Source of the DNA: Podarcis filfolensis
Taxonomy: Eukaryota
Reading direction: 5' to 3' (one strand)
Length of the DNA: 64,000 bases
Assembly (NCBI GenBank): GCA_964270895.1
Contig: OZ185440.1
The translations under genes were made by a program, and so were the position numbers. Positions 9,680 to 63,876 of this stretch are shown piece after piece. Within the stretch, counting starts at the first letter, position 1; each line of letters starts with the position of its first letter. The notes beneath the pieces are model-generated. The model saw nothing but the letters and a program-made list of their open reading frames with translations, was not told the origin of the DNA and did not search any database.

Positions 9680-9830
9680 GCCTGAGATAGCTAAGTTGGT
9701 AGAACATGAGACTCTTAATCTCAAGAGTCATGGGTTCAAGCCCCATGCTGGGCAAAAGATTGCTGCATTGCAGGGGGTTGGACTAAATGACCCTTGTGGT
9801 CCCTTCAAACTCTACAATTCTGTGATTCTA
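9680..9830 (+). mobile_element. tRNA(Lys)-derived SINE with CR1-type 3' tail
   Basis: Head resembles tRNA-Lys (GATAGCTAAGTTGGTAGAACATGAGACTCTTAATCTC..GGTTCAAGCCC); tail GGGGTTGGACTAAATGACC..ATTCTGTGATTCTA. Confidence 0.8.
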
Positions 9831-45400: not shown

Positions 45401-45532
45401 CGAGTTTTATTCTAGTCAACACAATTTGATTTGATTGAAGCCAAGTGCTTTTTTCTAAGGCATTTCAAATGTAGACCCCCCCCCCTCCTCTACTCCAGGA
45501 TATGAAAGCCCCCTGCTCTTCCCCGCCGGTAC

Positions 45533-45709
45533 CTCTTTGCAGGCGTGCAGCTCCTCTCCCGGAGTAGCGGCGCCTGCCCAAAGCAGCGACAGCAGAGAAA
45601 GCAGCAGAAGCGGCAGGCGCCTCCGCCCGAGCTCGGCACCAGGGAGGCACCGCCAGCACCCAGCTGTATCCGGCCGAGGAGGATGGACACTGCCAGCGGC
45701 CCCAGCCAT
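45533..45709 (-). CDS. ELAPOR1: ELAPOR1 (KIAA1324/EIG121) coding exon 1, signal peptide
   Basis: ATG in good Kozak context (ccacgATGG) at 45709, in a CpG island. Encodes MAGAAG...LPLLLLSLLSLLWAGAATPGEELHACKE (59 aa, hydrophobic core; ELHACKE matches recalled human ELAPOR1). GT donor at 45532. Phase 0. Confidence 0.92.
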
Positions 45710-48332: not shown

Positions 48333-49881
48333 GTAAGAGGGCCACCTATTAAGAATGCCCTCACCCATTTAAAAACACTTTTAAATGCACCCCTTTACAT
48401 TTATATTAACAAAGTGCCTAAAGTTATCCTCATCGGAGGGCTCATGCTATTGAACCTCTTTGGCATTAATGCAACTCTTGCTTCTACCTGACCTCATTGC
48501 TCTACCGTCAGGTGAGAAATGTTATTTGATTGTATTTTTTTTATCCTGCTTTTCAGACAAATATTGCCACCTAAAGAAGCTCAGGTCTATTGTTTGTTTC
48601 ATTTCTCAGTAGCTTTCAGAAGAAAAAGTCTCAAAACAGTTTGACAATAAAATACAGCACGTATAAACTATTTAAAAGCAGAGAGGAAAAAACACTAGCA
48701 GAGAAGTCTGAACCTGGCAACTAACAGATTTTATTGCTTTGGTTTTTTTGTAAATTGCTTTGAGGTTTTTTACGGTCAAGCAGTGTACTAATTTTATGTA
48801 ACAAACAAATAAATAAAAACTGACGAAGATGGTGGCAGGCATCTCTCCCTAGCAACAGCATTCCATAGACAAGAACACAATGGAAAAAGGCCTTTTGTTG
48901 TGTTTGAATTATTTTTAAAGAGACACAAGACTCAGGCTTACAAACAAAACAACAACAAAGAAAGGGGGGGAGAGATACACAATAGTTTCAAATCAGGCAT
49001 TTATACGCACATTTGGGCCAGGCCATTCTTCGCTTGTGGTGTTTTTCGCAGAAATGCAAAGGAAGGATGTAAAAAGAGCCCATTTATGCTGAAGTTCAAC
49101 CAAACTATTAACCTGGATTAAAAGGGGTTTGAATGGGAGGAATGTTATATAGTCCTGCTTAACTTTCACTGGGTAGAGGAAACTTCTTATGAAAAATAAA
49201 GATTGATAAAAAGGAAACTGAGAGGGAAAGCCAAAGCAGGAGGGTTAGATATCTTCAGAACACTTGGGAATGGGGGAGGAAGGGTTATCCAAAACTACAG
49301 TAATAGAAGCTGAGCTACTACTTATACTGCAGATCAGGAAAGACGTCACAAAATCCAAAATAAGGCCAGAGTGATTAGCAAATGAGAACAAAACAAAACA
49401 AAAAAAGACAAATTTTGGCAAAACAAATGCAAGCAGACAGTGCAAAAGTAAGGCATTGAGGATCAAATCACCAAAACCATTAGGACTAACAATAATAAAA
49501 TGCTTTCAATACACCATAATCTGGAAAGCAACTAGAGAAGACCCCCCACCCCCGTTTAAAGATTTAACCGGCCCTTGGACCTCTCCTCAAGCCACTCCCC
49601 TCTCACAGGCCACCCCCTTACTTGGCTCCCTGAGCATTTTCCCGATTGCAGTTTGTCCTGGAACTCTGATAATGCCTCTTGCTTGCTTGTGTGCGCAAAC
49701 CATCCTATTGTAGAAAAGTAAAATGTGCATATGTTGCTTTGCCTACTTTTGTCTCTGCCTCCAGCCACCATTGGCATATGGCCCTCAGAAGGTTGCAGAG
49801 AAGGGAATGTGTCCCTTGGGCTAAGAAAGAAGATTCCCTACTCCTGCCAAGGAGTATTTGTCCTGGTTTACTGGCCGCACT

Positions 49882-50244
49882 GGTGGGACGCGGGTGGCGC
49901 TGTGGGTAAAACCTCAGCACCTAGGACTTGCCGATCGTATGGTCGGCGGTTCAAATCCCCACGGCGGGGTGAGCTCCCGTCGTTCGGTCCCAGCTCCTGC
50001 CCACCTAGCAGTTTGAAAGCACCCTTAAGTGCAAGTAGATAAATAGGTACCGCTTTATAGCGGGAAGGTAAACAGCGTTTCCGTGTGCTGCGCTGGTGCA
50101 GGCTCGCCAGAGCAGCTTCGTCACGCTGGCCACGTGACCGGAAGTGTCTTCGGACAGCGCTGGCCCCCGGCCTCTTAAGCGAGATGGGTGCGCAACCCCA
50201 GTTGGTCATGACTGGCCCGCACGGGCAGGGGTACCTTTACCTTT
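49882..50244 (+). mobile_element. Sauria SINE (Squam1), full length
   Basis: tRNA-like head (GGTGGCGCTGTGG..GGTTCAAATCC), diagnostic AAGTGCAAGTAGATAAATAGGTACC core, (ACCTTT)n tail. Confidence 0.9.
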
Positions 50245-50256
50245 ACCGGCCGCACT

Positions 50257-50747
50257 TAAAGCATCTTAAAAAGTAGAGACATCACCTTGCCAACAAAGGT
50301 CCGTATAGTAAAAGCTATGGTTTTCCCAGTAGTGATGTATGGAAGTGAGAGCTGAACCATAAAGAAGGCTGATCGCCAAAGAATTGCTGCTTTTGAATTA
50401 TGGTGCTGGAGGAGACTCTTGAGAGTCCCATGGACTGCAAGAAGATCAAACGCATCCATTCTTAAGGAAATCAGTCCTGAGTGCTCACTGGAAGGACAGA
50501 TTGTGAAGCTGAGGCTCCAATACTTTGGCCACCTCATGAGAAGAGAAGACTCCCTGGAAAAGACCCTGATGTTGGGCACAAGGAGAAGGGGACGACAGAA
50601 GACGAGATGGTTGGATAGTGTTCTTGAAGCTACCAACATGAGTTTGACCAAACTGCGGGAGGCAGTGGAAGACAGGAGTGCCTGGCATGCTCTGGTCCAT
50701 GGGGTCACGAAGAGTCGGACACAACTAAACGACTAAACAACAACAAC
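50257..50747 (+). mobile_element. BovB (RTE) LINE 3' fragment
   Basis: KSRDITLPTKVRIVKAMVFPVVMYGSES... ELWCWRRLLRVPWTARRSN..QYFGHLMRREDSLEKTLMLG; ends GGGGTCACGAAGAGTCGGACACAACTAAACGAC followed by (AAC)n. Confidence 0.92.
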
Positions 50748-51746
50748 ACTGGCCACACTAAGCCAATCTTTGCCTTTGCACAAAAATGCAGGCTCCCAGA
50801 GAGGAGCCTGCAGCCACTTTCTTCCTCCACACTCTTTATTTGCTGCAAAATAAAAAAGGGGGCTGGGAGAAGTGGCCCAATGACGCAGGCAGCACTTTCC
50901 TTCTTCTCCACTGTCACTCACCAGGAAATCTATTTTCATGTGGTCATAAATCTACCTCTCTGCACCCTCAGATTAGGATGCACATTACTGGTAGTCCAGG
51001 GAACATCTAAGAGAACCCCTCTGACCCACCTATCCCACAAATCTACCTTAACCTCAGTTGCGTTTGACCGGCTGGCTCCAGGTGTGAATCAGCAGTGACT
51101 TGTATGTTCCTGGTCAGATTGACTGGAGGGCACATCAACATAAGGAAGCAGCTATTTAAACTGGCTTTTGAGTGCCAGGTGGCACTTTGGAAGACAGAAG
51201 GCAATACTGGAAGATGTTGTCACAATGCACTCACCTCAGATAAGAATGCACATTATCAATACATTCCTTTTCCAAGCAAGATAAAGGACCACATCCATTC
51301 CCTTTCAACAACTTGGGTAGAGGGAACCCTACCCCATACATTATACTCTTTCCAATAATGGAAGAAAGTGTAAGTACATTGCAAGGAAGATTGTGGGAAT
51401 AGAGACAATACCAAATTTTATCAAAGGATGGTTCTAAAATCTCAAAGTGCCACAATATATTTTGGGACTGCTGAAGCCACTAATTTTACACAAATGCACT
51501 TTATGAAAAAGTACTTTTAAGAGTAACTTGGAGACTCTAGACAACAAGACTACTACTCTCTACAAATAAATGTAGCCTCAGCAATATATAAGTGCTCCTC
51601 GCTTAAAACACTTCTCGCCTTTCTCTTTAAACCAGACTGCTTCCTGGTGGTCTGCACACAGCAGCAAATCCACAGCACGTGGTCCATCTGCTGCAACCTG
51701 TTGCCATGCCAAGGCTGTCTTGCCAGGCTTTGTTCACTCCTTTTGA

Positions 51747-52187: not shown

Positions 52188-53044
52188 CCGTCTCAGAGTA
52201 TAGAAATGTGAGGTGAAAGAACTCATGATGCTGCCTCTTCTGCCAATGTGCTGTCCTCTACTCTGAAAATATGAGAACCAGCTGGTTGGGAGTGTGTGTG
52301 TGTTCATTGATAGGAGGAAGGTCATTTTAGCTACAGTTCAGAAGACAACAACACATTTTTAACCTCATGTAAATCATCCCATGGACCCTAATCTAGCACA
52401 GGAAGCAGTGTCAGGCATATCAATTTTAGCTTTATAGATATGATTTTATACACTTAGCTTACTCACAGCCATGTTCACTCTTGCACGAAGCTTTACGAAT
52501 GAGCATGGGTTACTGTTCACCCAGAAAAAATACTGATAATGAGCGCTAAAATGCACCAACTGTTACCCAAAATTTGCTGATGGCTGAAGATTAGCAAATG
52601 TGGCATCAGTTCCCCAGAACACAGACACAGCATCCATACCAAGAACTTGTGGAAAACAGAAATGTCTAAAACAGCGTAGGGCCTGGGTCCTAAAGGCAGT
52701 GGGAGAAAGGGGTAAAAGCAGCACCCAATATACCACCTCTTCTACAGCAGCTTCTATATGCACTTAACAAGAGCTCCAAATGCACATCCCGACTACTTTA
52801 GTTGCTCACTGGGTAACTATGAGAAAGGGGCATAAGCGGAAGTGTGACTTTAGAATTTGAACAATTATACTACTGTACTCAATGAGGCAAAGTGCCTCAT
52901 TTTGGTTTCAGATTCGTCATTCTGAAATAGCACTGCACAGGGTTGGCCCACCTCACAAGTAACTTGGCTGGCAGGGTCCATCTCCTCAGACTGAACAAGT
53001 TTGCAATCACTCCTTTAAGTCTCTTATACTTCTCATTGATCCAG

Positions 53045-53161
53045 AAAACTCCATACTGTATTCCTACCCATCTTGCACAGCAACGAGACCCCTGGAATCG
53101 ACTACATGGGACACCTACGTTAGCAAGCATCAGAAGAGAAATTTGGTATACAGAACCTGAG
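53045..53161 (+). CDS. CFAP276: CFAP276 coding exon 2 (117 nt)
   Basis: KTPYCIPTHLAQQRDPWNRLHGTPTLASIRREIWYTEPE (cf. recalled human PTHLAQQQEPWSRLNSTPT); cag/gtaaaa. Confidence 0.93.
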
Positions 53162-53380
53162 GTAAAAATATTCATCTGATGCTACCATCCTTTGCTTGTG
53201 TTGCAAGGCTCTTTTGCTTTGCCCTCAATCAAAATAAGTTGGCTTTCATACACTGTCAGATTTGCTTTTAAATGGGCTACACTTTGACCCCTCAACACCT
53301 GTAGTTGCACTGTGTACTTAAAGCAGACTTATAAAAACATCAATACTGATTTCCCCATCCCTTCTTAAACTCATGGCTAG

Positions 53381-53496
53381 GTTTCCAAAGACAGTCTCGA
53401 TTTTAACCTCAGTGCTCTGTACAATCACCACGAAGATCTGCTTAAAGACAAGAGCAAGGTAGTTCTCCATAAGGAGACCCTATTTGATGACCATGG
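53381..53496 (+). CDS. CFAP276: CFAP276 coding exon 3 (116 nt)
   Basis: VSKDSLDFNLSALYNHHEDLLKDKSKVVLHKETLFDDH(G) (cf. DDLDFRLAALYNHH); tag/gtaagt. Confidence 0.93.
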
Positions 53497-54036
53497 GTAA
53501 GTGGAATTCATTGTTCTTGTAGAATTCAGCAAACAGCATGACTCTCCACAGAATTTGCATGAGCCAAAGGTGCAACATGTGTAGCTATGAGGCAGGTTGT
53601 TTCCATACTTTACTGAAAACATTTCTTCATCTATGCGCAGATGAGACACACCAATCTCCTGCCACAGTATACAACACAAAAACAGTGCAGGAAGTGCTTC
53701 TGCTTTGGCTTGTATTGCATGGGTATCCCATCTTATCCATCTGCACTTGCAATAATAGGCAAGTGCAGACAATGCTGAAGCAACCAACTTTGCACTGCAC
53801 ACTGGAAACCCAAGCCAGTGAATATTACCTTGGCAAAATATGGGTCTCTACTTACTTAGCACTCTATATTGTCTTAGGGTGCTTCTCAGTGAGAGCACGC
53901 CTACAGATCTTAAATCACTTTAATGCTTACAGATACAAAACAAAATCCATACTCCAATGCACAGAATATGGGAGTGATGCCCCGGAATTTATTACTTTCT
54001 TACATGTTAACACATGTTCTCACTCTTGTTTTTGAG

Positions 54037-54170
54037 ACAACTGAAGGGTTTAGAGCCTGTGAAGGAACGCACAGCACCTCTGACTCAGCATCCTACTTCC
54101 AAGGGTATATCTGTGAGACACTGGGTCAACCCAGTAAGAGAGTCAATCCACAACATTGAAGGAGCTATTG
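54037..54170 (+). CDS. CFAP276: CFAP276 coding exon 4 (134 nt), GAG acceptor
   Basis: QLKGLEPVKERTAPLTQHPTSKGISVRHWVNPVRESIHNIEGAI (cf. IRHWINPKKESIHSIQGSI); gtaagc donor. The 5' boundary requires a pyrimidine-tract + GAG acceptor to keep phase. Confidence 0.8.
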
Positions 54171-54219
54171 GTAAGCACAAGTTGTAGACATTCATTTTAC
54201 CTCTCCTAAAGAATTACCC

Positions 54220-54505
54220 CGAATCCCCGCAACGGGGTGAGCTCCCGTTGCTCGGTCCCTGCTCCTGCCAACCTAGCAGTTCGAAAGCACGTCAAAGTGC
54301 AAGTAGATAAATAGGTACTGCTCCAGGCGGTAAGATAAATGGCGTTTCCGTGCATTGCTCTGGTTCGCCAGAAGCGGCTTAGTCATGCTGGCCACATGAC
54401 CCAGAAGCTGTACGCCGGCTCCCTCAGCCAATAAAGCAAGATGAGCGCTGCAGCCCCAGAGTCGGTCACGACTGGACCTAATGGTCAGGGGTCCCTTTAC
54501 CTTTA
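54220..54505 (+). mobile_element. Sauria SINE, 5'-truncated, in CFAP276 intron 4
   Basis: Same core and ACCTTT tail as 49882-50244. Confidence 0.88.
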
Positions 54506-55063
54506 AAGAGAGTAAGAACATAAATCCATAGTGACCAGCTCATGTTCAGCAAATCTAACTCCTACCTAGATACCCTACTGTCCCAGGTCCTTTTTAATTA
54601 TTTTGAATATCAAGTTTTTATTTACATTATCTAATCATATTCTTCAACCTATCCCTGTGTTAAAAACTAATGCATTCAGAGTAGATATACTTTTAAAATT
54701 AGGGCGATGAAAGCTCCTCTACGTTTATATTCTGCTTGAGAAACCACTGAAATGAATGGTGTGGATCACACTTTAAACTAGACTGGAGAAAAGTCTTCAA
54801 AAACATTGTTGGCCACTAATTGATAAGAAATTTAGAGCTAAGCAGAACACGTGTAGGTTTTGTGCATTCATTTAGATCTCCATTTTTTTCTGTTATGCTG
54901 CTTAACATCATCTGGAAACTTTTGAATTGATGGTTTTCAATTTACCACAAGAAATTAAGAGCTTCCTCTTAAATTGATGTGTGGTACTATTTAGAGCTCT
55001 GATTGGAAAATTTCTCAGTGTATGGAATACTCAGAAAGTTGACTGTGACTTTTGTCTTTTCAG

Positions 55064-55134
55064 AATCTCATCACACTGCAGCCACTAACAGTGGATACTC
55101 ACGCAAAGAGAATGGTGGGATCTTCTACCACTAA
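55064..55134 (+). CDS. CFAP276: CFAP276 coding exon 5 (71 nt incl. TAA)
   Basis: ESHHTAATNSGYSRKENGGIFYH* (cf. conserved HTAATNGGYSRKKDGGFF); ttttcag acceptor. Total CDS 519 nt = 172 aa. Confidence 0.93.
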
Positions 55135-55533
55135 GAGTTTTGCATGGCCATGATGCTGCTTCTGTCCTTTCAGTCTGTGTTTACGTGTACCTGAGTTAAG
55201 TCTTCAATGATTGCTTTCATTTTAGGATCCTTGATTAAACCACCCAGCTTCACTGAATTCTAGTAGCAGCACATCTATACTGTTCCCCAGTACTGTACTT
55301 GAGAGGAACAAACTGCTTCTTGCCTATCAGCAAAATCAGTTACAGTAATCTGAACTGAAGTCCTAAAAGGACAGCATTTAGAAACTATCACTTTAGGCAG
55401 GCAGTGCATTGCACTCTCACAATGAAAAATGCCAAGGTTAAACTGTTGTAAAAGCCATTTCTCTACTAATTCAGGCGGCTAGCTAGTTTCACTGTTTAAA
55501 AAGAGCACTGCACATATGGACAGGAATGCCCAT

Positions 55534-55587
55534 CTTTATTACTACTGAGTCTTTATTACTACTGAGTCTTTATTACTACTGAGTCTT
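55534..55587. repeat. 17-bp tandem repeat x3
   Basis: CTTTATTACTACTGAGT repeated three times exactly. Confidence 0.9.
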
Positions 55588-55642
55588 GTCTATGCAAACA
55601 AGTCCAAGGGCTGAACCCTTAAAAGAATTAAAGCCAATAGTA

Positions 55643-55873
55643 CAGTGGTACCTCAGGTTACGAACTTAATTCATCCCGGAGGTCTGTTCTTAACCCAAAA
55701 CTGTTCTTAACCTGAGGTGCGCTTTCGCTAATGGGGCCTCCTGCTTCCGCCCTGCAACTTCCGCTCATATCCTGGGGCAAAGTTTGCAACCAGGAGCATG
55801 TACTTCCGGGTTAGCGGAGCTCCTTACCTGAAGTGTTCGTAAGGAGGATGGTACATAACCAGAGGTTCCACTG
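55643..55873. mobile_element. Tigger/pogo-like MITE
   Basis: TIR CAGTGG(T/A)ACCTC; TA TSD. Confidence 0.8.
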
Positions 55874-56572
55874 TATGTTTAACATTCAAGAAAAAATACA
55901 CTCAAATGAGAACAGGCCAATTATTTCTCAATTTAGCCTAGCAAGCAATCTCCCTAAGCATGTCTTCCTCCTCTTGACTCCAAAAGCACATGAAAATGCT
56001 GACAGGTAGAAGGAATTGTAGATTCCCTTTGTCATTTTGAGAACTTAAATTAGGAGTCTTAGGCGAGGCCTGCTTTCTGTAATTTTAACCCCCAGAGGCC
56101 ATTTTAATTGTTACTGTATTATCAGCCTCCACATGGTGGCAACAATTTGAGAAGCAGCCCTGTAAGACACGGGCACAGCTTGGGAAACATTGCATGGTTC
56201 CACAGAAGGAACCACGCAACATGCAAGCATCATGAACTCTTTGAACAGAGCCTGCAAGTGTCCGTTTATAGCACAAGGAAGAGGCTTATGGCACCTTAAG
56301 GACTTAACAAAGAGCTTTCTTGGACTACAACCCATCTCACCATCAGTCCACTAGATGGAATGAAGTCGGGGGTGGGGGGAGCATGCCAGAATTAATTGTT
56401 CCAAGTTGTTTTCGCACCGCGAATTCCATTAGCATTTATTGGGAAGGTCTTTTCAGGAAAGCCAGCAGCCTTGTGCGAGGGACGGGGATGGAGAGCGGGA
56501 GTCGTTGTCGCAGCAAAGGAAGACGCCCGAGGCAGGAACAAAGGGGCGGCTCAGGCGGAGCTGCTGCGGTCG

Positions 56573-56975
56573 AGCCGGATCAGAATCGCTCCGATACACA
56601 TTGGCCAGGAGGAGGGGGAAGGGAACCCCCCCGCAGCCTCCAGCCTCGTCTATCTGATCAGTTCATCACCTCCGGCTTAAAACGCCGCCCGCTCGCTTCA
56701 CCTGCTTCACTGCACAGCGCCCGAGGGCTTCGCAGGGAGAAGGGTTCTTCTCATCTCAGGCCTGGGGAGGCGGCAGCATCCCGGCCCGATCAAATAAGAT
56801 CAACGTGTAAATGAGGGAAAGGAGTGCCGTAGCGCAGGGGCTCCACACGCGCGCCACTCAACCCACGCACACGCCTCACGCAGCGCACGTACCCCCTAGC
56901 ATCCCCACACATACCTTCCGCGCCCCACCACAGCCACACACCACTCGCTCTGCCCCTGGCTACTCTCTGAGGAAG
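56573..56975 (-). ncRNA. SCARNA2: Small Cajal body-specific RNA 2 (mgU2-25/61), independently transcribed composite box C/D scaRNA
   Basis: On the minus strand: a GU-rich 5' region (~56830-56960). Guide UUACACGUUGAUCUUAU + UUGA box (56810-56790) is complementary to U2 nt 22-35 with G25 at the fifth position. C box GUGAUGA at 56669-56663. Guide AUCAGAUAG + ACGA box is complementary to U2 58-65 with C61 at the fifth position. Terminal D box CUGA at 56583-56580. 7-bp terminal stem AGCCGGA/UCCGGCU. Position between TMEM167B and CFAP276 matches human. 5' end is estimated from the TATA box. Confidence 0.9.
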
Positions 56976-56996
56976 CGCCTCGCGCCCCGCCTCCGG

Positions 56997-57029
56997 CTTT
57001 TATACCCCAGCCCCGTTGCATGATGGGAA
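56997..57029 (-). promoter_or_regulatory. SCARNA2 promoter: TATA box plus ZNF143/Staf binding site
   Basis: TATAAAAG at 57004-56997; TTCCCATCATGCAACGGG at 57029-57012 fits the Staf/ZNF143 consensus YWCCCRNMATSCMYYRCR with 2 mismatches; within a CpG island. Confidence 0.75.
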
Positions 57030-59292
57030 CCGCGCAGATCGCGTTCTCGCGGTCCCTGCTGAGTGCCCCGCCTCTTCCGAGGCACCAAGAGAAGGGCGGG
57101 GTTTGTGGATTCGCAGATCCTGTTCGCTCATAGCCTCGCCAACCCTGGAGACTCCGGGATAAAAGTGGGCAAGTTCCCTGAAGGAAATCGGGGTGACATT
57201 CAGAATTCTGGCGTAATCTGTGGCTGGGCAGCGGCTTGTGTTCCCCCCCAGCCCCCAAAACAGCAGTAAAACTTGGAAGCGCTCGTGCTGCTTAAAGAAT
57301 GATTCCCCCGCCCTTCGCCAGCTGCTGTCACCACCGAGGGCAAAATAACTGACCTTTATGGGAATAAAGTTATGGTAGACAAGCTAGCCAGCCGCAGATT
57401 CGCTCCCCTGCATTTTTACTGGAGACTCGAGGGCAAACTTTAGAAATCTTTTTCTTCGTCCGTTGCCATGCTACCGAGGGGAAAGCCATGGTCTGGGTTA
57501 TCCTTGCATCCCAAGCCAGCTTGTGATTCGTCTCCCATACAACGCACTGTTAGCCAAGAACAAATCTTGGCTATGGGCCATGGTTTGTCTGGAGAAAGAA
57601 AGCCCTATTTTATTTCCAAGCACACACACACTTTCTTGTTCACTTGGCCATTGTTTGCCTTAGCTGCAAGAACTGGGCTTGCTTTCACTATTACAAGAGA
57701 TACAAACATAATCAGAACAAAAGTCCCTTTATGTTATATAAAATTGGTTTCCTGGTAAATTATAATAATAAATGTACTTGGGCTTGTGGCTGAAGTCTCT
57801 GTAATAACAGTAAAATATATTAGAAGCTACAGCTGTTTTCATATCCATTCCTGCAGAATATCACTTTCCAATTATCCACAACGGGAAATGGAAAAAGACC
57901 CACTGCATAAAGAGCTGAGGGGCTGTAAGTGAACACTTAAATGGCATGCAGTGCAATATTTCATTTGCTATAACTAGAGTTACAATTCTAACTATACTCA
58001 CTCTACTAAATTTAGCAGCCCTGGTTTAGTATTATATTCCAAAACTCCGAAAAGATATTCCATATCCTCCTCTTGAAATCTGCCTCTAGGAATGCTAAAA
58101 CCTTCAAGAACAAATTTTGAGGGCACACAAAGGGCTGTCAGAAGGGCAAAGAAAGGTAGAGTCCATTCTGATCGTGCATAGACATCTTTAGATACAACTC
58201 ATTGAATTTTGCAATGCAGTGCTAACTTTTCAATGGAAGGGCAGATGGAATAACACCAAAATAAAGAACATAAACAGATGGCCTCCAATGGTGAACTGAG
58301 GATGGTTTATTTGCCCAATGTATTTCTAGCTTGTTGACTTTCTCAGAGGCAGCTTTTACGCTTGTAAAAGCAAACAAACCAGAAGATCAAAAATATGTGC
58401 TACCACCATCACGAATGCACATTTGAGGTCTCTTCTCAATATTCCTGCATAATTTTAGTAAAAAAAAAGTTTAAAAATAATTTTAAGGTAGTACACATTT
58501 AATTGCCTAACACCCTTTACATACCCACCTTCTCTTGCTAACAATTAGTTCCAGCTTATGTCCTGCCCTTTCAATGTGTGGTTGTGTGTGAAGTTGACAT
58601 TCCACTCCATACAAGAAATCAGGAGTATAAAGTCAAGCAATAAAAGCTTTTCAAGAGTAACAGAATGGCTCACACAATGATCTTGGTCCACTCTCCCAGC
58701 CTGAACTACATTGCAGGGTTCTTGTGGAGAGCATGCTTGCCATACTGAGCTCATAGAGGAAGGCTAGAATAAAGATTTGATAAAAGAGATACATAGTGGT
58801 TCATACTGATTTTACAAATAACCACACTATACAACATGAATGACACTATAGCTTAAGCCATAATACAACTGTTAGTCTTTAAGGTGTTAAAGACTATTTA
58901 ACTAGATAGAATTCAATATGCTGAGCTATAAAAACCAAGATATTTTTTTTTTAAGTACAGACATATTTAGGGATGCTCTCACTGCTATATCAATTCATGC
59001 TCCCTTGAAGTGAACATGTCTTGAATTTCTTGAAGATTTTTTTCATGAGTAAAGATTCCAATAAGCTTTCCTGATATATTGGTTGAAAACGGAACTGAAA
59101 ATACAGATGCAGCTGAACAGGCTAGTGCACTGTGAATAAAACAGAAAAAAACAATCTATTCCCATTTTTATATAATTTTATATTTACTTTTCCAGCAGTT
59201 CACTAAACACATGCCTACAGTATAATTGTGCACATAACCTTCTCACACAGTGGCAAAGCATGCCAATTTCCCCTTGCCAATTCCCCAAAGAG

Positions 59293-60681: not shown

Positions 60682-61067
60682 CTGATACACGGGTGGCACT
60701 GTGGCCTAAACCACTGAGCCTCTTGGGCTTGCCGATCAGGTCAGCGGTTCGATTCCCCACAACAGGGTGAGCTCCCATTGCTCGGTCCCAGTTCCTGCCC
60801 ACCTAGCAGTTTGAATGCATGCCATAAGTGCAAGTAGATAAATAGGTACTGCTCCAGTGCGAAGGTAAACGGCATTTCTGTGCGCTGCTCTGGTTTCGGT
60901 GTTCCGTTGCGCCAGAAGCGGCTTAGTCATGCTGGCCACATGACCTGGAAAAACTGTCTGCGGACAAACGCCAGCTCCCTCAGCCTGTAAAGCGAGATGA
61001 GCACTGCAACCCCCGAGTCGTCTGCAACTGGTCTTAACTGTCAGGGGTCCTTTACCTTTACCTTTTT
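60682..61067 (+). mobile_element. Sauria SINE, full length, with 9-bp TSD
   Basis: Head, core and ACCTTT tail; TAGATACAA at 60673-60681 and 61068-61076. Confidence 0.9.
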
Positions 61068-62657
61068 TAGATACAATTTTATTTGTTCTATATTGCATTG
61101 AGTCTGCTTTTATACTAATTTTGAAGTTGAAAACATCTTAATTTTAGTATCAGAAAACCACTCTCAAATCAAATACCACTCTATACAGGAATTGAACATT
61201 CTGTGAGCACTAAACTTTGTTTTTGCTTTCTCAGTTCCCTGGAACATGCAGCTGGTAGAATTCATTAATATTCCTTGAGTTCCCACCCATGAAAATAAGA
61301 AATAAAATGTCAAGAGGCTATTAGATACAAAGTATGGGGAAGAAAAATAATGCAGGTTTATTCACACACATACTTCTGAAATACCCAAAGGCCCAGTTAG
61401 GGCTCCAGTGTACTTCTTGCCAATTTATAAAAATGCGGTAAGAGACAGTTCCTGTCTGTGATGACATACAAACTTGCCTTTTCAGTTTTATACAAACTAT
61501 GGATTTAAAAAAATGCCCCAGTCCTGAAGTTACTTGTGAATTTCTGTCCATCAAGTGTTTTCAACATTGAAAACTTAAAATAAAACATGCACTTTTACTG
61601 CTTCTACTATAGCTGCTTCTAATCTAGATGATGACCTCCTATAATGTAAGGACAAGGTAAAAAGGGAGGTAAATTCAAATTCAAATAAGGACAGTGAAGA
61701 AGAAAAAGAAGATAAAAGGGTATCATTTAAAAAAAAAGCAAACATAAATCTTTCACCTTTAAAGTTTATACACTTTCCAAAATATACAAGCTACGATCTT
61801 TAAATGTAATTTAAACATTTTAACATCTATTAACTTATGTAACAGCATATGTCCCCATTGCTTTCTCCTACACAGCAACATCCAAAAACTGGGTATGTTT
61901 GAATTGCTGTCGATTGTTAATTGTGTGCCACAGAACTTGCAGCATTTCAGCCATTCTTGGCTGTTTGCAAGAGGTGGTAAGGCTGTTAATTATGCCAAGG
62001 TGGTGTGAATATATCACCAAACAGCATTTTATTTCCTTTGTGATTCAGATTGTTTTTTCCTTCAAGGGTAAAAAGTGCATAAACACTTCTTTGAACTGTG
62101 CAAAGATTTTACTTTATTACTAGCTAGTTTACCATATCCAGTTACTAATTTTTATGATAGCTTTATCCTCCAATCTTAAAAGTGCATTAATAAAAGAAAA
62201 AAGCCAATGAAAGCAAAATCCACACCTGTACTTTGCTGTTCATTATTACATTTTTTGGGATTTAGAGCAATTCCCTTTAAAACACCAGGAATGCAAATCC
62301 TTCCCCCCGCCCCCTCTATCCTGTGCCAGACTCTGGAAACACATTATTCACTTCCATTTGCCACAAACTTTGATGGTTTTCCTTGTGCAGATTGTAATAT
62401 TGATTTTAAGAATCTGCACATAAAACAAACTTTGTTGATCATGTTCAAACTTACTAGAAGCACAGAGGATGGTTGCTGTTATAAAAGCCACTCCCTTGGT
62501 CTCAAAAAAGGCTTGGTCATAGAAGAATTTCCCCTTGACATCTGTGCAGGGTTCTGTGTCAGTTCCTCTAAGAGATATTTTGTCCTCTGAAGCAAAAGAG
62601 ATATGCCTTCTTTAGCATCTTCATTCAAACAACACTGTCCATCTGAAGCGCTGAGAT

Positions 62658-62740
62658 TCATTTTATAAAGAGGACATAAAAAGCCATTACAATGCAGGAT
62701 ATTGCCACTGCTGCATGCAGTCTAGTACCAATCACTGCCG
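62658..62740 (-). CDS. TMEM167B: TMEM167B coding exon 3 (83 nt incl. TGA)
   Basis: [27 protein letters not shown]; ttttccag acceptor. Total 74 aa. Confidence 0.96.
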
Positions 62741-63499
62741 CTGGAAAACAAAAGAGATATTTACAAGTTGTAACAGTATAGAGCACACATTACTTCTTCG
62801 AATTTTTGTGAGAATTAAGCATAAGCACTAGATCGTCTTTATTACCACATAAACTAAAGCAAGGGCATCAAACTCAAGTATGCTGGAAATCCAAATTCCC
62901 CACCAAGTAATTGCCTAGTGCCGATATTAGTAATGGTTAATGGGGGTGGGGAGAGATGCAAATTCTGTCTGAATTGAACAAGACGAAGTTCTACCTCACT
63001 GAGTACTTGTTGCTTACCACTTACTAAGTTCTGTTCTACTAAAGTTAGTAATTTTTTTACAGCAGCTTTAACAATTTTGTTTGCTCTTAAGCAATTAAAA
63101 GAATGAAGCTGAGAACCAATATTTATTATGCACTTGTCCTGTTGTAACCTAGAGATCCTAGGAACAAGTGGTTCCCCACCTCCCTCAAAAAACCAGCTAT
63201 CAAAACTCACCATAGAACCAATCAACAAACCCCCACTCTCTGAAGCGACCGATCACATAAACAAGCCTGTTGTGATGCATCCCAACTCACAATGCAGACG
63301 CTTCCTAAGCTTAACTACATTCTACCAACTGTCAGGAACATTTCCTTGAAGGTTTGTTTGTTCGTTTAACATTTTATGGCATGAAATAGGCAAAGAACGT
63401 CCTCCTCTCCTGGCAGTTTGTGAAGGCTGCCCAGACTTTCCCCCACCCATTTCGCCTTCCCTCCCGGTTGACCCCTGGGGTTGAGAGCAAGAGGATTAC

Positions 63500-63631
63500 C
63501 TTTGTAGAATACCCCCCAGACGCCCCTCTTCTCCGAGAGCAGCCAGACTTTCAGCCGAGGCACCTTCCGGAAGTAGGCGCAGGTGCACACGAAGAGCAAC
63601 CCGAACACCAGCAGCCCGTCCAGCGAATACA
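63500..63631 (-). CDS. TMEM167B: TMEM167B coding exon 2 (132 nt)
   Basis: [44 protein letters not shown]; cag/gtaatc. Confidence 0.96.
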
Positions 63632-63876
63632 CTGCAAGGGAAGAGAGAGAGAGGGGCCGTCTTGAGTCAGGGCCTCCCGGCTCTTAAGGGTGGCGGGCAG
63701 CAGGGGGGGGAGGGTCTAGCGAAGAAGCCCCCAGGCCAGCCTCTGGTCCTCGCCCCGAGGGCTCCGCCCCGCTCTGGAAGGTGGGGGTGGCAGTTAGTCA
63801 GGGAGGAGGAACAAGGCGCAGGGTCACTTTGCGGGGCAGCCCCCGCTGAGGCAAACCCCCACCCCACCCGTCTCAC

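What the first reader, a model, noticed from the sequence alone, without database searches (positions are those of the whole stretch)
56573..56975. Stand-alone scaRNA2 gene hidden between CFAP276 and TMEM167B
Seen: an intergenic CpG island with no credible protein ORF, but with TATA and Staf sites, a GU-rich 5' arm, two box C/D modules with U2-complementary guides, and a perfect terminal stem. Established: human SCARNA2 lies in this position, is transcribed by Pol II from its own promoter (unusual for scaRNAs), guides U2 2'-O-methylation at G25/C61, and is processed to a shorter mgU2-61 RNA. It is not new as a family, but the ORF track misses it and reptile annotations may too.
Basis: partly seen in the sequence, partly recalled or inferred. 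Interest (0 to 1): 0.72.

Follow-up and report, generated by a model that had tools for sequence, protein, structure and literature searches.

The report
Lizard SCARNA2 guide-RNA gene, confirmed

Summary
The finding is confirmed, and it is a known gene. Rfam's SCARNA2 model (RF01268) matches window 56575-56975, minus strand, over its full length (116 bits against a cut-off of 48, E 3e-27).

- **Position:** the locus lies between CFAP276 (+) and TMEM167B (-), the mirror image of the human order TMEM167B-SCARNA2-C1orf194.
- **Setting:** it sits in a CpG island with no Pfam-supported ORF.
- **Promoter:** a TATAAAAG starts at -29. The window's only strong Staf/ZNF143 site is at -54/-37. These are the two promoter elements reported as conserved from fish to mammals.
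- **Guides:** two conserved antisense elements place U2 G25 and C61 exactly five nucleotides upstream of a D'-type box.
- **3' domain:** it has canonical boxes C and D closed by a perfect 7-bp stem.
- **Expression:** in two RNA-seq runs of a close relative, reads fall only on the gene body, all in one orientation. The flanks have none.
- **Conservation:** the gene body differs about 1.3% between species, against about 8% in the 3' flank.

- There is one Staf site, not several.
- The 5' module is only C/D-like, as in human.
- The terminal stem closes the 3' domain, not the whole RNA.

Any Rfam-based annotation would find this gene, so interest is low.

The parts
56573..56975 (-). SCARNA2 (mgU2-25/61) gene body, about 401-403 nt
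   Evidence: Rfam RF01268 match at 56575-56975, model 1-420/420, 116.1 bits, E 3e-27. Two more nt (56574-56573) extend the terminal stem to 7 bp. RNA reads of a relative cover only this interval.
56997..57004 (-). TATA box TATAAAAG at -29..-22
   Evidence: Only TATAWAWR on the minus strand in 56400-57400. The human element lies at -31/-26 (PMC2811027).
57012..57029 (-). Staf/ZNF143 binding site (SBS) TTCCCATCATGCAACGGG at -54..-37
   Evidence: Matches 15 of 18 consensus positions and is the only such site in the 64 kb. The core occurs once where 0.03 are expected. The human SBS lies at -70/-53 and is conserved in fish and Xenopus.
57066..57101 (-). Imperfect palindrome carrying two GC boxes (CCCCGCCC ... 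GGCGGGG) at -126..-91. It may be an upstream promoter element; function not tested.
   Evidence: Read directly from the sequence. It occupies roughly the distance of the mammalian X element (-152/-129), but no comparison of the sequences was possible.
56400..57200 (.). CpG island around the gene and its promoter
   Evidence: GC 0.61 and CpG o/e 0.85, against 0.44 and 0.29 for the window.
56836..56955 (-). GU-rich 5' arm (RNA nt 21-140)
   Evidence: 72-78% G+U in 40-nt windows, with two (GU)3 runs. GU repeats in scaRNA2, 7 and 9 have been proposed as Cajal-body localisation signals (PMC4395269). Four of the eight listed differences from relatives fall here.
56790..56803 (-). 5' module guide UUGAUCUUA (nt 173-181) plus D'-like box UUGA (nt 183-186)
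   Evidence: 9 Watson-Crick bp to U2 22-30. C178, which pairs with G25, is the 5th nt upstream of UUGA. The block is identical to the Rfam consensus.
56749..56789 (-). Hairpin (nt 187-220) and C'-like GAUGA (nt 221-225), which with UUGA form a K-turn-like internal motif
   Evidence: Rfam consensus structure and alignment; sequence.
56573..56677 (-). 3' canonical C/D domain, the predicted mgU2-61 product of about 101-105 nt
   Evidence: 7-bp stem AGCCGGA/UCCGGCU, box C GUGAUGA (56663-56669) and box D CUGA (56580-56583). It carries an insert of 31 nt where the Rfam consensus has 8.
56646..56658 (-). 3' domain guide AUCAGAUA (nt 318-325) and degenerate D' box ACGA (nt 327-330)
   Evidence: 8 Watson-Crick bp to U2 58-65. 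G322, which pairs with C61, is the 5th nt upstream of ACGA. The block is identical to the Rfam consensus.
52943..55134 (+). Neighbour: CFAP276 (C1orf194) exons, convergent with SCARNA2
   Evidence: ORF 52943-53179 matches Pfam DUF3695 at 4.4e-10. ORFs ending at 54187 and 55134 resemble the human C-terminal exons, judged from memory.
62658..63632 (-). Neighbour: TMEM167B (Kish-B) coding exons, upstream of SCARNA2 on the same strand
   Evidence: ORF 63366-63632 matches Pfam DUF1242 at 1.7e-10. The last exon ends in ...[27 protein letters not shown]. The choice of paralogue B over A rests on memory and synteny.

Best explanation
Window 56573-56975 (minus strand) is the squamate orthologue of SCARNA2 (mgU2-25/61).

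It is a stand-alone gene. RNA polymerase II transcribes it from a compact promoter made of a TATA box at -29 and one Staf/ZNF143 site at -54/-37, inside a CpG island. The product is a capped RNA of about 400 nt that is not translated.

The RNA assembles with the box C/D proteins (fibrillarin, Nop56, Nop58, 15.5K) at two places. One is the canonical C/D motif of the 3' domain. The other is the C/D-like K-turn of the 5' module. Two antisense elements then pair with U2 snRNA, so that G25 and C61 lie opposite the fifth nucleotide upstream of a D'-type box and receive 2'-O-methyl groups.

The GU-rich 5' arm probably helps retain the RNA in Cajal bodies. The 3' domain can probably be released as a shorter mgU2-61-like RNA, here about 100 nt.

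Shown here: family membership, synteny, promoter motifs, guide geometry, transcription of the gene body alone in a close relative, and stronger conservation than the flank. Inferred from human work: Pol II dependence, the cap, Cajal-body localisation, processing, and the actual methylation of U2.
For: - **Rfam:** RF01268 matches over its full length at 116.1 bits against a gathering score of 48, E 3e-27. It is the only such hit in the 64 kb.
- **Synteny:** the order is CFAP276 (+, DUF3695), SCARNA2 (-), TMEM167B (-, DUF1242). This mirrors the human list TMEM167B, SCARNA2, C1orf194 (PMC5050361).
- **Promoter:** TATAAAAG lies at -29. A Staf site found nowhere else in the window lies at -54/-37. 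These are the two elements Gerard et al. found conserved from fish to mammals, and both act in human cells.
- **Guides:** 9 bp to U2 22-30 and 8 bp to U2 58-65. Both obey the box D+5 rule for G25 and C61, and no shuffle of 2000 has both. Both blocks are identical to the Rfam consensus, while the arm and the internal loops diverge.
- **3' domain:** boxes C and D with a perfect 7-bp stem, which the MFE fold also recovers.
- **Expression:** in raw stranded RNA runs X23 and X24 of a relative, depth is 0.5-6.5 in 56600-56999. All first mates lie on the + strand, which in most stranded libraries means a minus-strand RNA. Depth is zero in 55900-56599 and in 57000-58499. Contigs of two small runs span 56626-56960 and 56626-56952 and stop short of the promoter.
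- **Conservation:** 5 changes in 386 nt of the gene against 17 in 207 nt of the 3' flank, Fisher p 4e-5. None of the eight listed changes touches a box, guide or stem.
- **Coding:** no Pfam family in any overlapping ORF.
Against: - The RNA evidence comes from a close relative (about half of the 31-mers shared), not from the window's own organism. It amounts to only about 10-20 reads.
- The strandedness convention of those libraries could not be checked on a control gene within the stretch laid.
- The whole-RNA fold is no more stable than shuffles (z +0.41). That is usual for C/D RNAs and gives no support.
- The 5' end is set only by the Rfam alignment, which is weak over the first 30 nt, and by the TATA spacing.
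- In the 3' domain the lizard reads UGUGUA where the Rfam consensus has a conserved UGAUUA, the likely C' box. A degenerate C'/D' pair could weaken C61 guidance.
- One contig of run X1 (56368-56632) runs 207 nt past the mature 3' end. It is either a 3'-extended precursor or DNA in that run.
Confidence: 0.94

Rival explanations
1. It is a decaying or non-functional SCARNA2 relic: a pseudogene that still resembles the family but no longer yields a working guide RNA.
For: The central hairpin is shortened, with several deletions and non-canonical pairs in the Rfam alignment. The C'-like box of the 3' domain differs from the consensus (UGUGUA against UGAUUA). RNA read depth is low.
Against: The copy sits in the ancestral syntenic slot with its TATA and Staf promoter intact. 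Both guides, boxes C and D and the terminal stem are intact. The gene body evolves about six times more slowly than its 3' flank. It is transcribed in a relative. No second copy is present in the window.
Confidence: 0.03
2. The RNA has no promoter of its own. It is cut out of read-through or 3'-UTR transcripts of the upstream same-strand gene TMEM167B.
For: TMEM167B lies about 5.7 kb upstream on the same strand. Most vertebrate scaRNAs are processed from host transcripts. Human scaRNA2 can be made from heterologous Pol II promoters (PMC2811027).
Against: RNA depth is zero in the 1.5 kb directly upstream (57000-58499) in both raw runs, while the gene body is covered. A TATA box at -29 and the window's only Staf site lie directly upstream, within a CpG island. 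The human orthologue is proven to be an independent unit.
Confidence: 0.02
3. The CpG island is the promoter and first exon of an unannotated protein-coding or long non-coding gene, and the likeness to SCARNA2 is incidental.
For: GC-rich ORFs of 70-164 aa overlap the stretch on both strands.
Against: An E-value of 3e-27 over the full covariance model is not incidental. The ORFs match no Pfam family and three of the four start with TTG. Reads stop at the gene's ends and no splice joints were reported in the gene.
Confidence: 0.01

Closest known systems
Human SCARNA2 / mgU2-25/61 (Rfam RF01268; Tycowski et al. 2004 as cited in PMC2811027; Gerard et al. 2010, PMC2811027)
   Same: - Overall architecture: a GU-rich 5' part, a C/D-like module with the G25 guide, and a canonical 3' C/D domain with the C61 guide.
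- An independent TATA plus Staf/ZNF143 promoter.
- An intergenic position between TMEM167B and C1orf194/CFAP276, convergent with the latter.
   Different: - Length is 401-403 nt against 420 nt.
- The central hairpin is about 35 nt shorter.
- The apical part of the 3' domain is 23 nt longer, so the predicted mgU2-61 is about 101-105 nt against about 80 nt.
- The Staf site lies 16 bp closer to the TATA box (-54/-37 against -70/-53).
- The mammalian X and Y promoter elements were not identifiable; Gerard et al. also found them missing outside mammals.
- The conserved UGAUUA of the 3' domain reads UGUGUA here.
SCARNA17 (mgU12-22/U4-8) and SCARNA9, the other composite or processed C/D scaRNAs
   Same: They are composite box C/D guides for snRNAs. 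scaRNA17 is also capped and independently transcribed. scaRNA9 also has GU repeats and is processed into shorter guides.
   Different: Their guides and targets differ (U12/U4; U2 G19/A30). No Rfam hit to these families was found at this locus.
Independently transcribed snoRNAs U3, U8 and U13
   Same: They are Pol II-transcribed, capped box C/D RNAs with Staf-responsive enhancers.
   Different: They use a PSE/DSE snRNA-type promoter and a 3' box. This locus, like human SCARNA2, has a TATA-type promoter. No 3' box is known for SCARNA2.

Membership tests
SCARNA2 (Rfam RF01268) | Covariance-model score at or above the curated gathering score, over the full model | tested here: met
   116.1 bits against 48, E 3e-27, model 1-420/420, not truncated.
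SCARNA2 (Rfam RF01268) | 3' canonical box C/D domain: box C RUGAUGA, box D CUGA and a terminal stem | tested here: met
   GUGAUGA at nt 307-313, CUGA at nt 393-396, and a 7-bp perfect stem at 299-305/397-403.
SCARNA2 (Rfam RF01268) | Antisense element that places U2 C61 opposite the 5th nt upstream of a D' box | tested here: met
   AUCAGAUA (nt 318-325) pairs with U2 58-65. G322 pairs with C61 and is 5 nt upstream of ACGA. The U2 segment was recalled from memory and the D' box is degenerate.
SCARNA2 (Rfam RF01268) | C/D-like 5' module with an antisense element that places U2 G25 opposite the 5th nt upstream of its D'-like box | tested here: met
   UUGAUCUUA (nt 173-181) pairs with U2 22-30. 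C178 pairs with G25 and is 5 nt upstream of UUGA. A K-turn-like UUGA/GAUGA motif is present.
SCARNA2 (Rfam RF01268) | Independent Pol II promoter with TATA and Staf/ZNF143 site (Gerard et al. 2010) | tested here: met
   The motifs are present at -29 and -54/-37, and the Staf site is the only one in the window. Promoter activity and polymerase dependence cannot be tested here.
SCARNA2 (Rfam RF01268) | Orthologous position between TMEM167B and CFAP276/C1orf194 | tested here: met
   Pfam DUF1242 and DUF3695 exons flank the locus in mirrored human order. The choice of TMEM167 paralogue B rests on memory.
SCARNA2 (Rfam RF01268) | Expressed as a discrete RNA of about 400 nt from the predicted strand | tested here: inconclusive
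   In a close relative, stranded reads cover only 56600-56999 in one orientation and the flanks have none. No RNA run of the window's own organism was available, there are few reads, and exact ends were not mapped.
SCARNA2 (Rfam RF01268) | 5' cap, Cajal-body localisation, processing to mgU2-61, and actual 2'-O-methylation of U2 G25/C61 | not testable with these tools
   Known for human only.

The most novel reading that the evidence does not exclude
The squamate gene may be a remodelled variant. Its 3' domain has a 23-nt G/C-rich expansion. Its C' box appears degenerate (UGUGUA where other vertebrates keep UGAUUA). Its promoter has the Staf site 16 bp closer to the TATA box. If so, the released mgU2-61-like RNA would be about 100 nt, and C61 guidance or processing in lizards could differ from mammals.
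Probability: 0.1. Interest if true: 0.2.

Novelty: already known. Interest (0 to 1): 0.1.

Why it matters
It matters only as annotation. The result shows that the SCARNA2 transcription unit is kept in squamates as it is from fish to mammals. That covers its TATA and Staf promoter, both U2 guides, and its slot between TMEM167B and CFAP276. It also explains an otherwise ORF-less intergenic CpG island. It opens no new question, and any Rfam-based annotation would recover the gene.

Tried and rejected
- **Second U2 pairing:** a 10-bp pairing with wobbles between nt 377-386 and U2 60-69 looked interesting. It puts C61 eight rather than five nt upstream of box D, and a run that long arises in 16% of shuffles. 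I rejected it as chance.
- **Second Staf site:** the next best candidate in the upstream 400 bp scores 14 of 18 and lacks the CCC core. Not accepted.
- **Fold stability:** the whole-RNA MFE has z +0.41, which is uninformative.
- **ORFs:** the overlapping ORFs gave nothing in Pfam.
- **Literature:** a search for squamate SCARNA2 in a 2026 snoRNA-evolution paper found no mention of reptiles. The scaRNA28 paper added only general information on UG repeats.
- **Earlier findings of the scan:** they hold only this same note and unrelated repeat and U2-retrocopy notes.
- **Not done:** the large protein searches were not used. The neighbours' families were settled by Pfam, and the A/B paralogue question does not change the verdict.

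Full report
**The observation.** I read window 56300-57300 on the minus strand and scanned the whole window against Rfam 15 at gathering thresholds. Two families passed. One is a tRNA at 9681-9754. The other is SCARNA2 (RF01268) at 56575-56975 on the minus strand: 116.1 bits against a gathering score of 48, E 3e-27, model positions 1-420 of 420, not truncated.

**Setting.** The interval 56400-57200 is a CpG island, with GC 0.61 and CpG o/e 0.85, against 0.44 and 0.29 for the window. The window holds no N. The longest ORFs overlapping the stretch (70-164 aa, three with TTG starts and one with ATG) match no Pfam family even at E<=1.

**Neighbours.**
- Upstream on the same strand, ORF 63366-63632 matches Pfam DUF1242, the Kish/TMEM167 family, at 1.7e-10. 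Together with ORF 62658-62786 it reads like TMEM167B. The choice of paralogue B rests on my memory of the human protein.
- Downstream on the + strand, and so convergent, ORF 52943-53179 matches DUF3695 at 4.4e-10, the CFAP276/C1orf194 family. Further exon-like ORFs end at 54187 and at the stop at 55134.
- A clinical microarray report lists the human genes at 1p13.3 in the order TAF13, TMEM167B, SCARNA2, C1orf194, KIAA1324 (PMC5050361). The window shows the same order and relative orientations, mirrored.

**Promoter.** Gerard et al. (PMC2811027) showed that human SCARNA2 is an independent Pol II unit. Its TATA box lies at -31/-26 and its Staf/ZNF143 site at -70/-53. Only these two elements are conserved in fish and Xenopus. 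Here TATAAAAG lies at 57004-56997, which is -29..-22 from the Rfam 5' end. It is the only TATAWAWR on that strand within 1 kb. TTCCCATCATGCAACGGG at 57029-57012 (-54..-37) matches 15 of 18 positions of the Staf consensus, which I recalled from memory. No other site on either strand of the 64 kb scores that high. Its core TTCCCANNATGCA occurs once where 0.03 are expected. I found one convincing Staf site, not several. It sits 16 bp closer to the TATA box than in human. An imperfect palindrome with two GC boxes lies at -126..-91; I did not test its role.

**Anatomy of the RNA (nt 1 = 56975).**
- Nt 21-140 are 72-78% G+U but hold only two short (GU)3 runs. GU repeats in scaRNA2, 7 and 9 have been proposed as Cajal-body localisation elements (PMC4395269).
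- Nt 173-181 (UUGAUCUUA) form 9 Watson-Crick pairs with U2 22-30. C178 pairs with G25 and is the fifth nucleotide upstream of UUGA (183-186).
- UUGA, a hairpin (187-220) and GAUGA (221-225) make the K-turn-like 'C/D-like' motif drawn in the Rfam consensus. This is not a second canonical C/D module, and the same is true in human.
- The 3' domain (nt 299-403) has a perfect 7-bp stem AGCCGGA/UCCGGCU, box C GUGAUGA (307-313) and box D CUGA (393-396). The MFE fold recovers this stem.
- Its guide AUCAGAUA (318-325) forms 8 pairs with U2 58-65. G322 pairs with C61 and is the fifth nucleotide upstream of a degenerate D' box, ACGA.
- Among 2000 shuffles, 8 had a 9-bp match to the first U2 segment, 45 had an 8-bp match to the second, and none had both. 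Both guide blocks are letter-for-letter identical to the Rfam consensus, while the arm and the loops diverge.

**Expression.** No RNA run of the window's own organism was on offer. I laid two raw stranded RNA runs (X23, X24) of a close relative, which shares about half of the 31-mers, and two small runs of uncertain kind (X1, X13) on window 55500-58499.
- In both raw runs, depth in unique sequence is non-zero only in the four 100-nt bins 56600-56999 (0.5-6.5x).
- Every first mate lies on the + strand, which in most stranded libraries means a minus-strand RNA.
- Depth is zero in 55900-56599 and in 57000-58499. Nothing therefore runs in from TMEM167B, and the promoter is not transcribed.
- Contigs of X1 and X13 span 56626-56960 and 56626-56952.
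- One X1 contig (56368-56632) extends 207 nt past the mature 3' end. It fits the 3'-extended precursors seen in human, or it is DNA in that run.
- The evidence is thin, about 10-20 reads from another species, and the library convention was not verified on a control gene.

**Conservation.** Between the relative and the window there are 5 changes in 386 nt of the gene, against 17 in the 207 nt downstream (Fisher p 4e-5). The eight listed differences fall in the GU arm (4), the pyrimidine linker (2), the apical hairpin (1) and the central region (1). None falls in a box, guide or stem. The tool withheld 15 further rows for the stretch as a whole, so this list may be incomplete.

**Differences from the consensus.**
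- The central hairpin is about 35 nt shorter.
- The apical part of the 3' domain is 23 nt longer (31 against 8 inserted nt).
- The conserved UGAUUA upstream of box D reads UGUGUA.
- The predicted mgU2-61 equivalent is therefore about 101-105 nt, against about 80 nt in human.
- A 10-bp wobble pairing of nt 377-386 with U2 60-69 breaks the +5 rule and arises in 16% of shuffles, so I treat it as chance.

**Verdict.** The stretch is the squamate orthologue of a well-characterised gene found across vertebrates. A standard Rfam scan recovers it at a very strong score. I could not test whether public annotations omit it. Novelty: already known. Interest: low. Cap, localisation, processing and U2 methylation are inferred from human work.

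Noticed in passing
window 9680-9754 (+): A tRNA-Lys(CTT) gene is called by both Rfam (33.1 bits, just above the gathering score of 29) and ARAGORN. Several acceptor-stem pairs are flagged as non-canonical, so it may be a tRNA-derived repeat or a pseudogene.
   Followed up: partly
window 55640-55820: A high-copy repeat begins GTACAGTGGTACCTCAGGTTACGAAC. Depths reach hundreds in the raw RNA runs and tens of thousands in the contig runs, on both strands, with many loose ends and variants. It looks like a transcribed SINE-type element in the CFAP276-SCARNA2 spacer.
   Followed up: partly
window 49868-50209, 54273-54521, 60736-61098: ORF translations share motifs (...IYLLALKGAFKLLGGQELGPN......YLFIYLH..VLSNC). 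They point to three copies of one interspersed repeat. The first coincides with the SINE/BovB noted by the scan at 49870-50759.
   Followed up: no
window 45455-45709 (-): A GC-rich ORF has a signal-peptide-like start and ...GEELHACKE. From memory it resembles exon 1 of ELAPOR1/KIAA1324, head to head with CFAP276 as in human. That would extend the conserved synteny one gene further.
   Followed up: no
window 56368-56632: One contig of run X1 continues 207 nt beyond the mature SCARNA2 3' end. It shows about 8% divergence and four small deletions relative to the window. It is either a 3'-extended precursor or DNA carried in that run.
   Followed up: partly
window 57066-57101 (-): An imperfect palindrome with two GC boxes (CCCCGCCC...GGCGGGG) lies at -126..-91 of SCARNA2, roughly where mammals have the strong but unidentified X element.
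   Followed up: no
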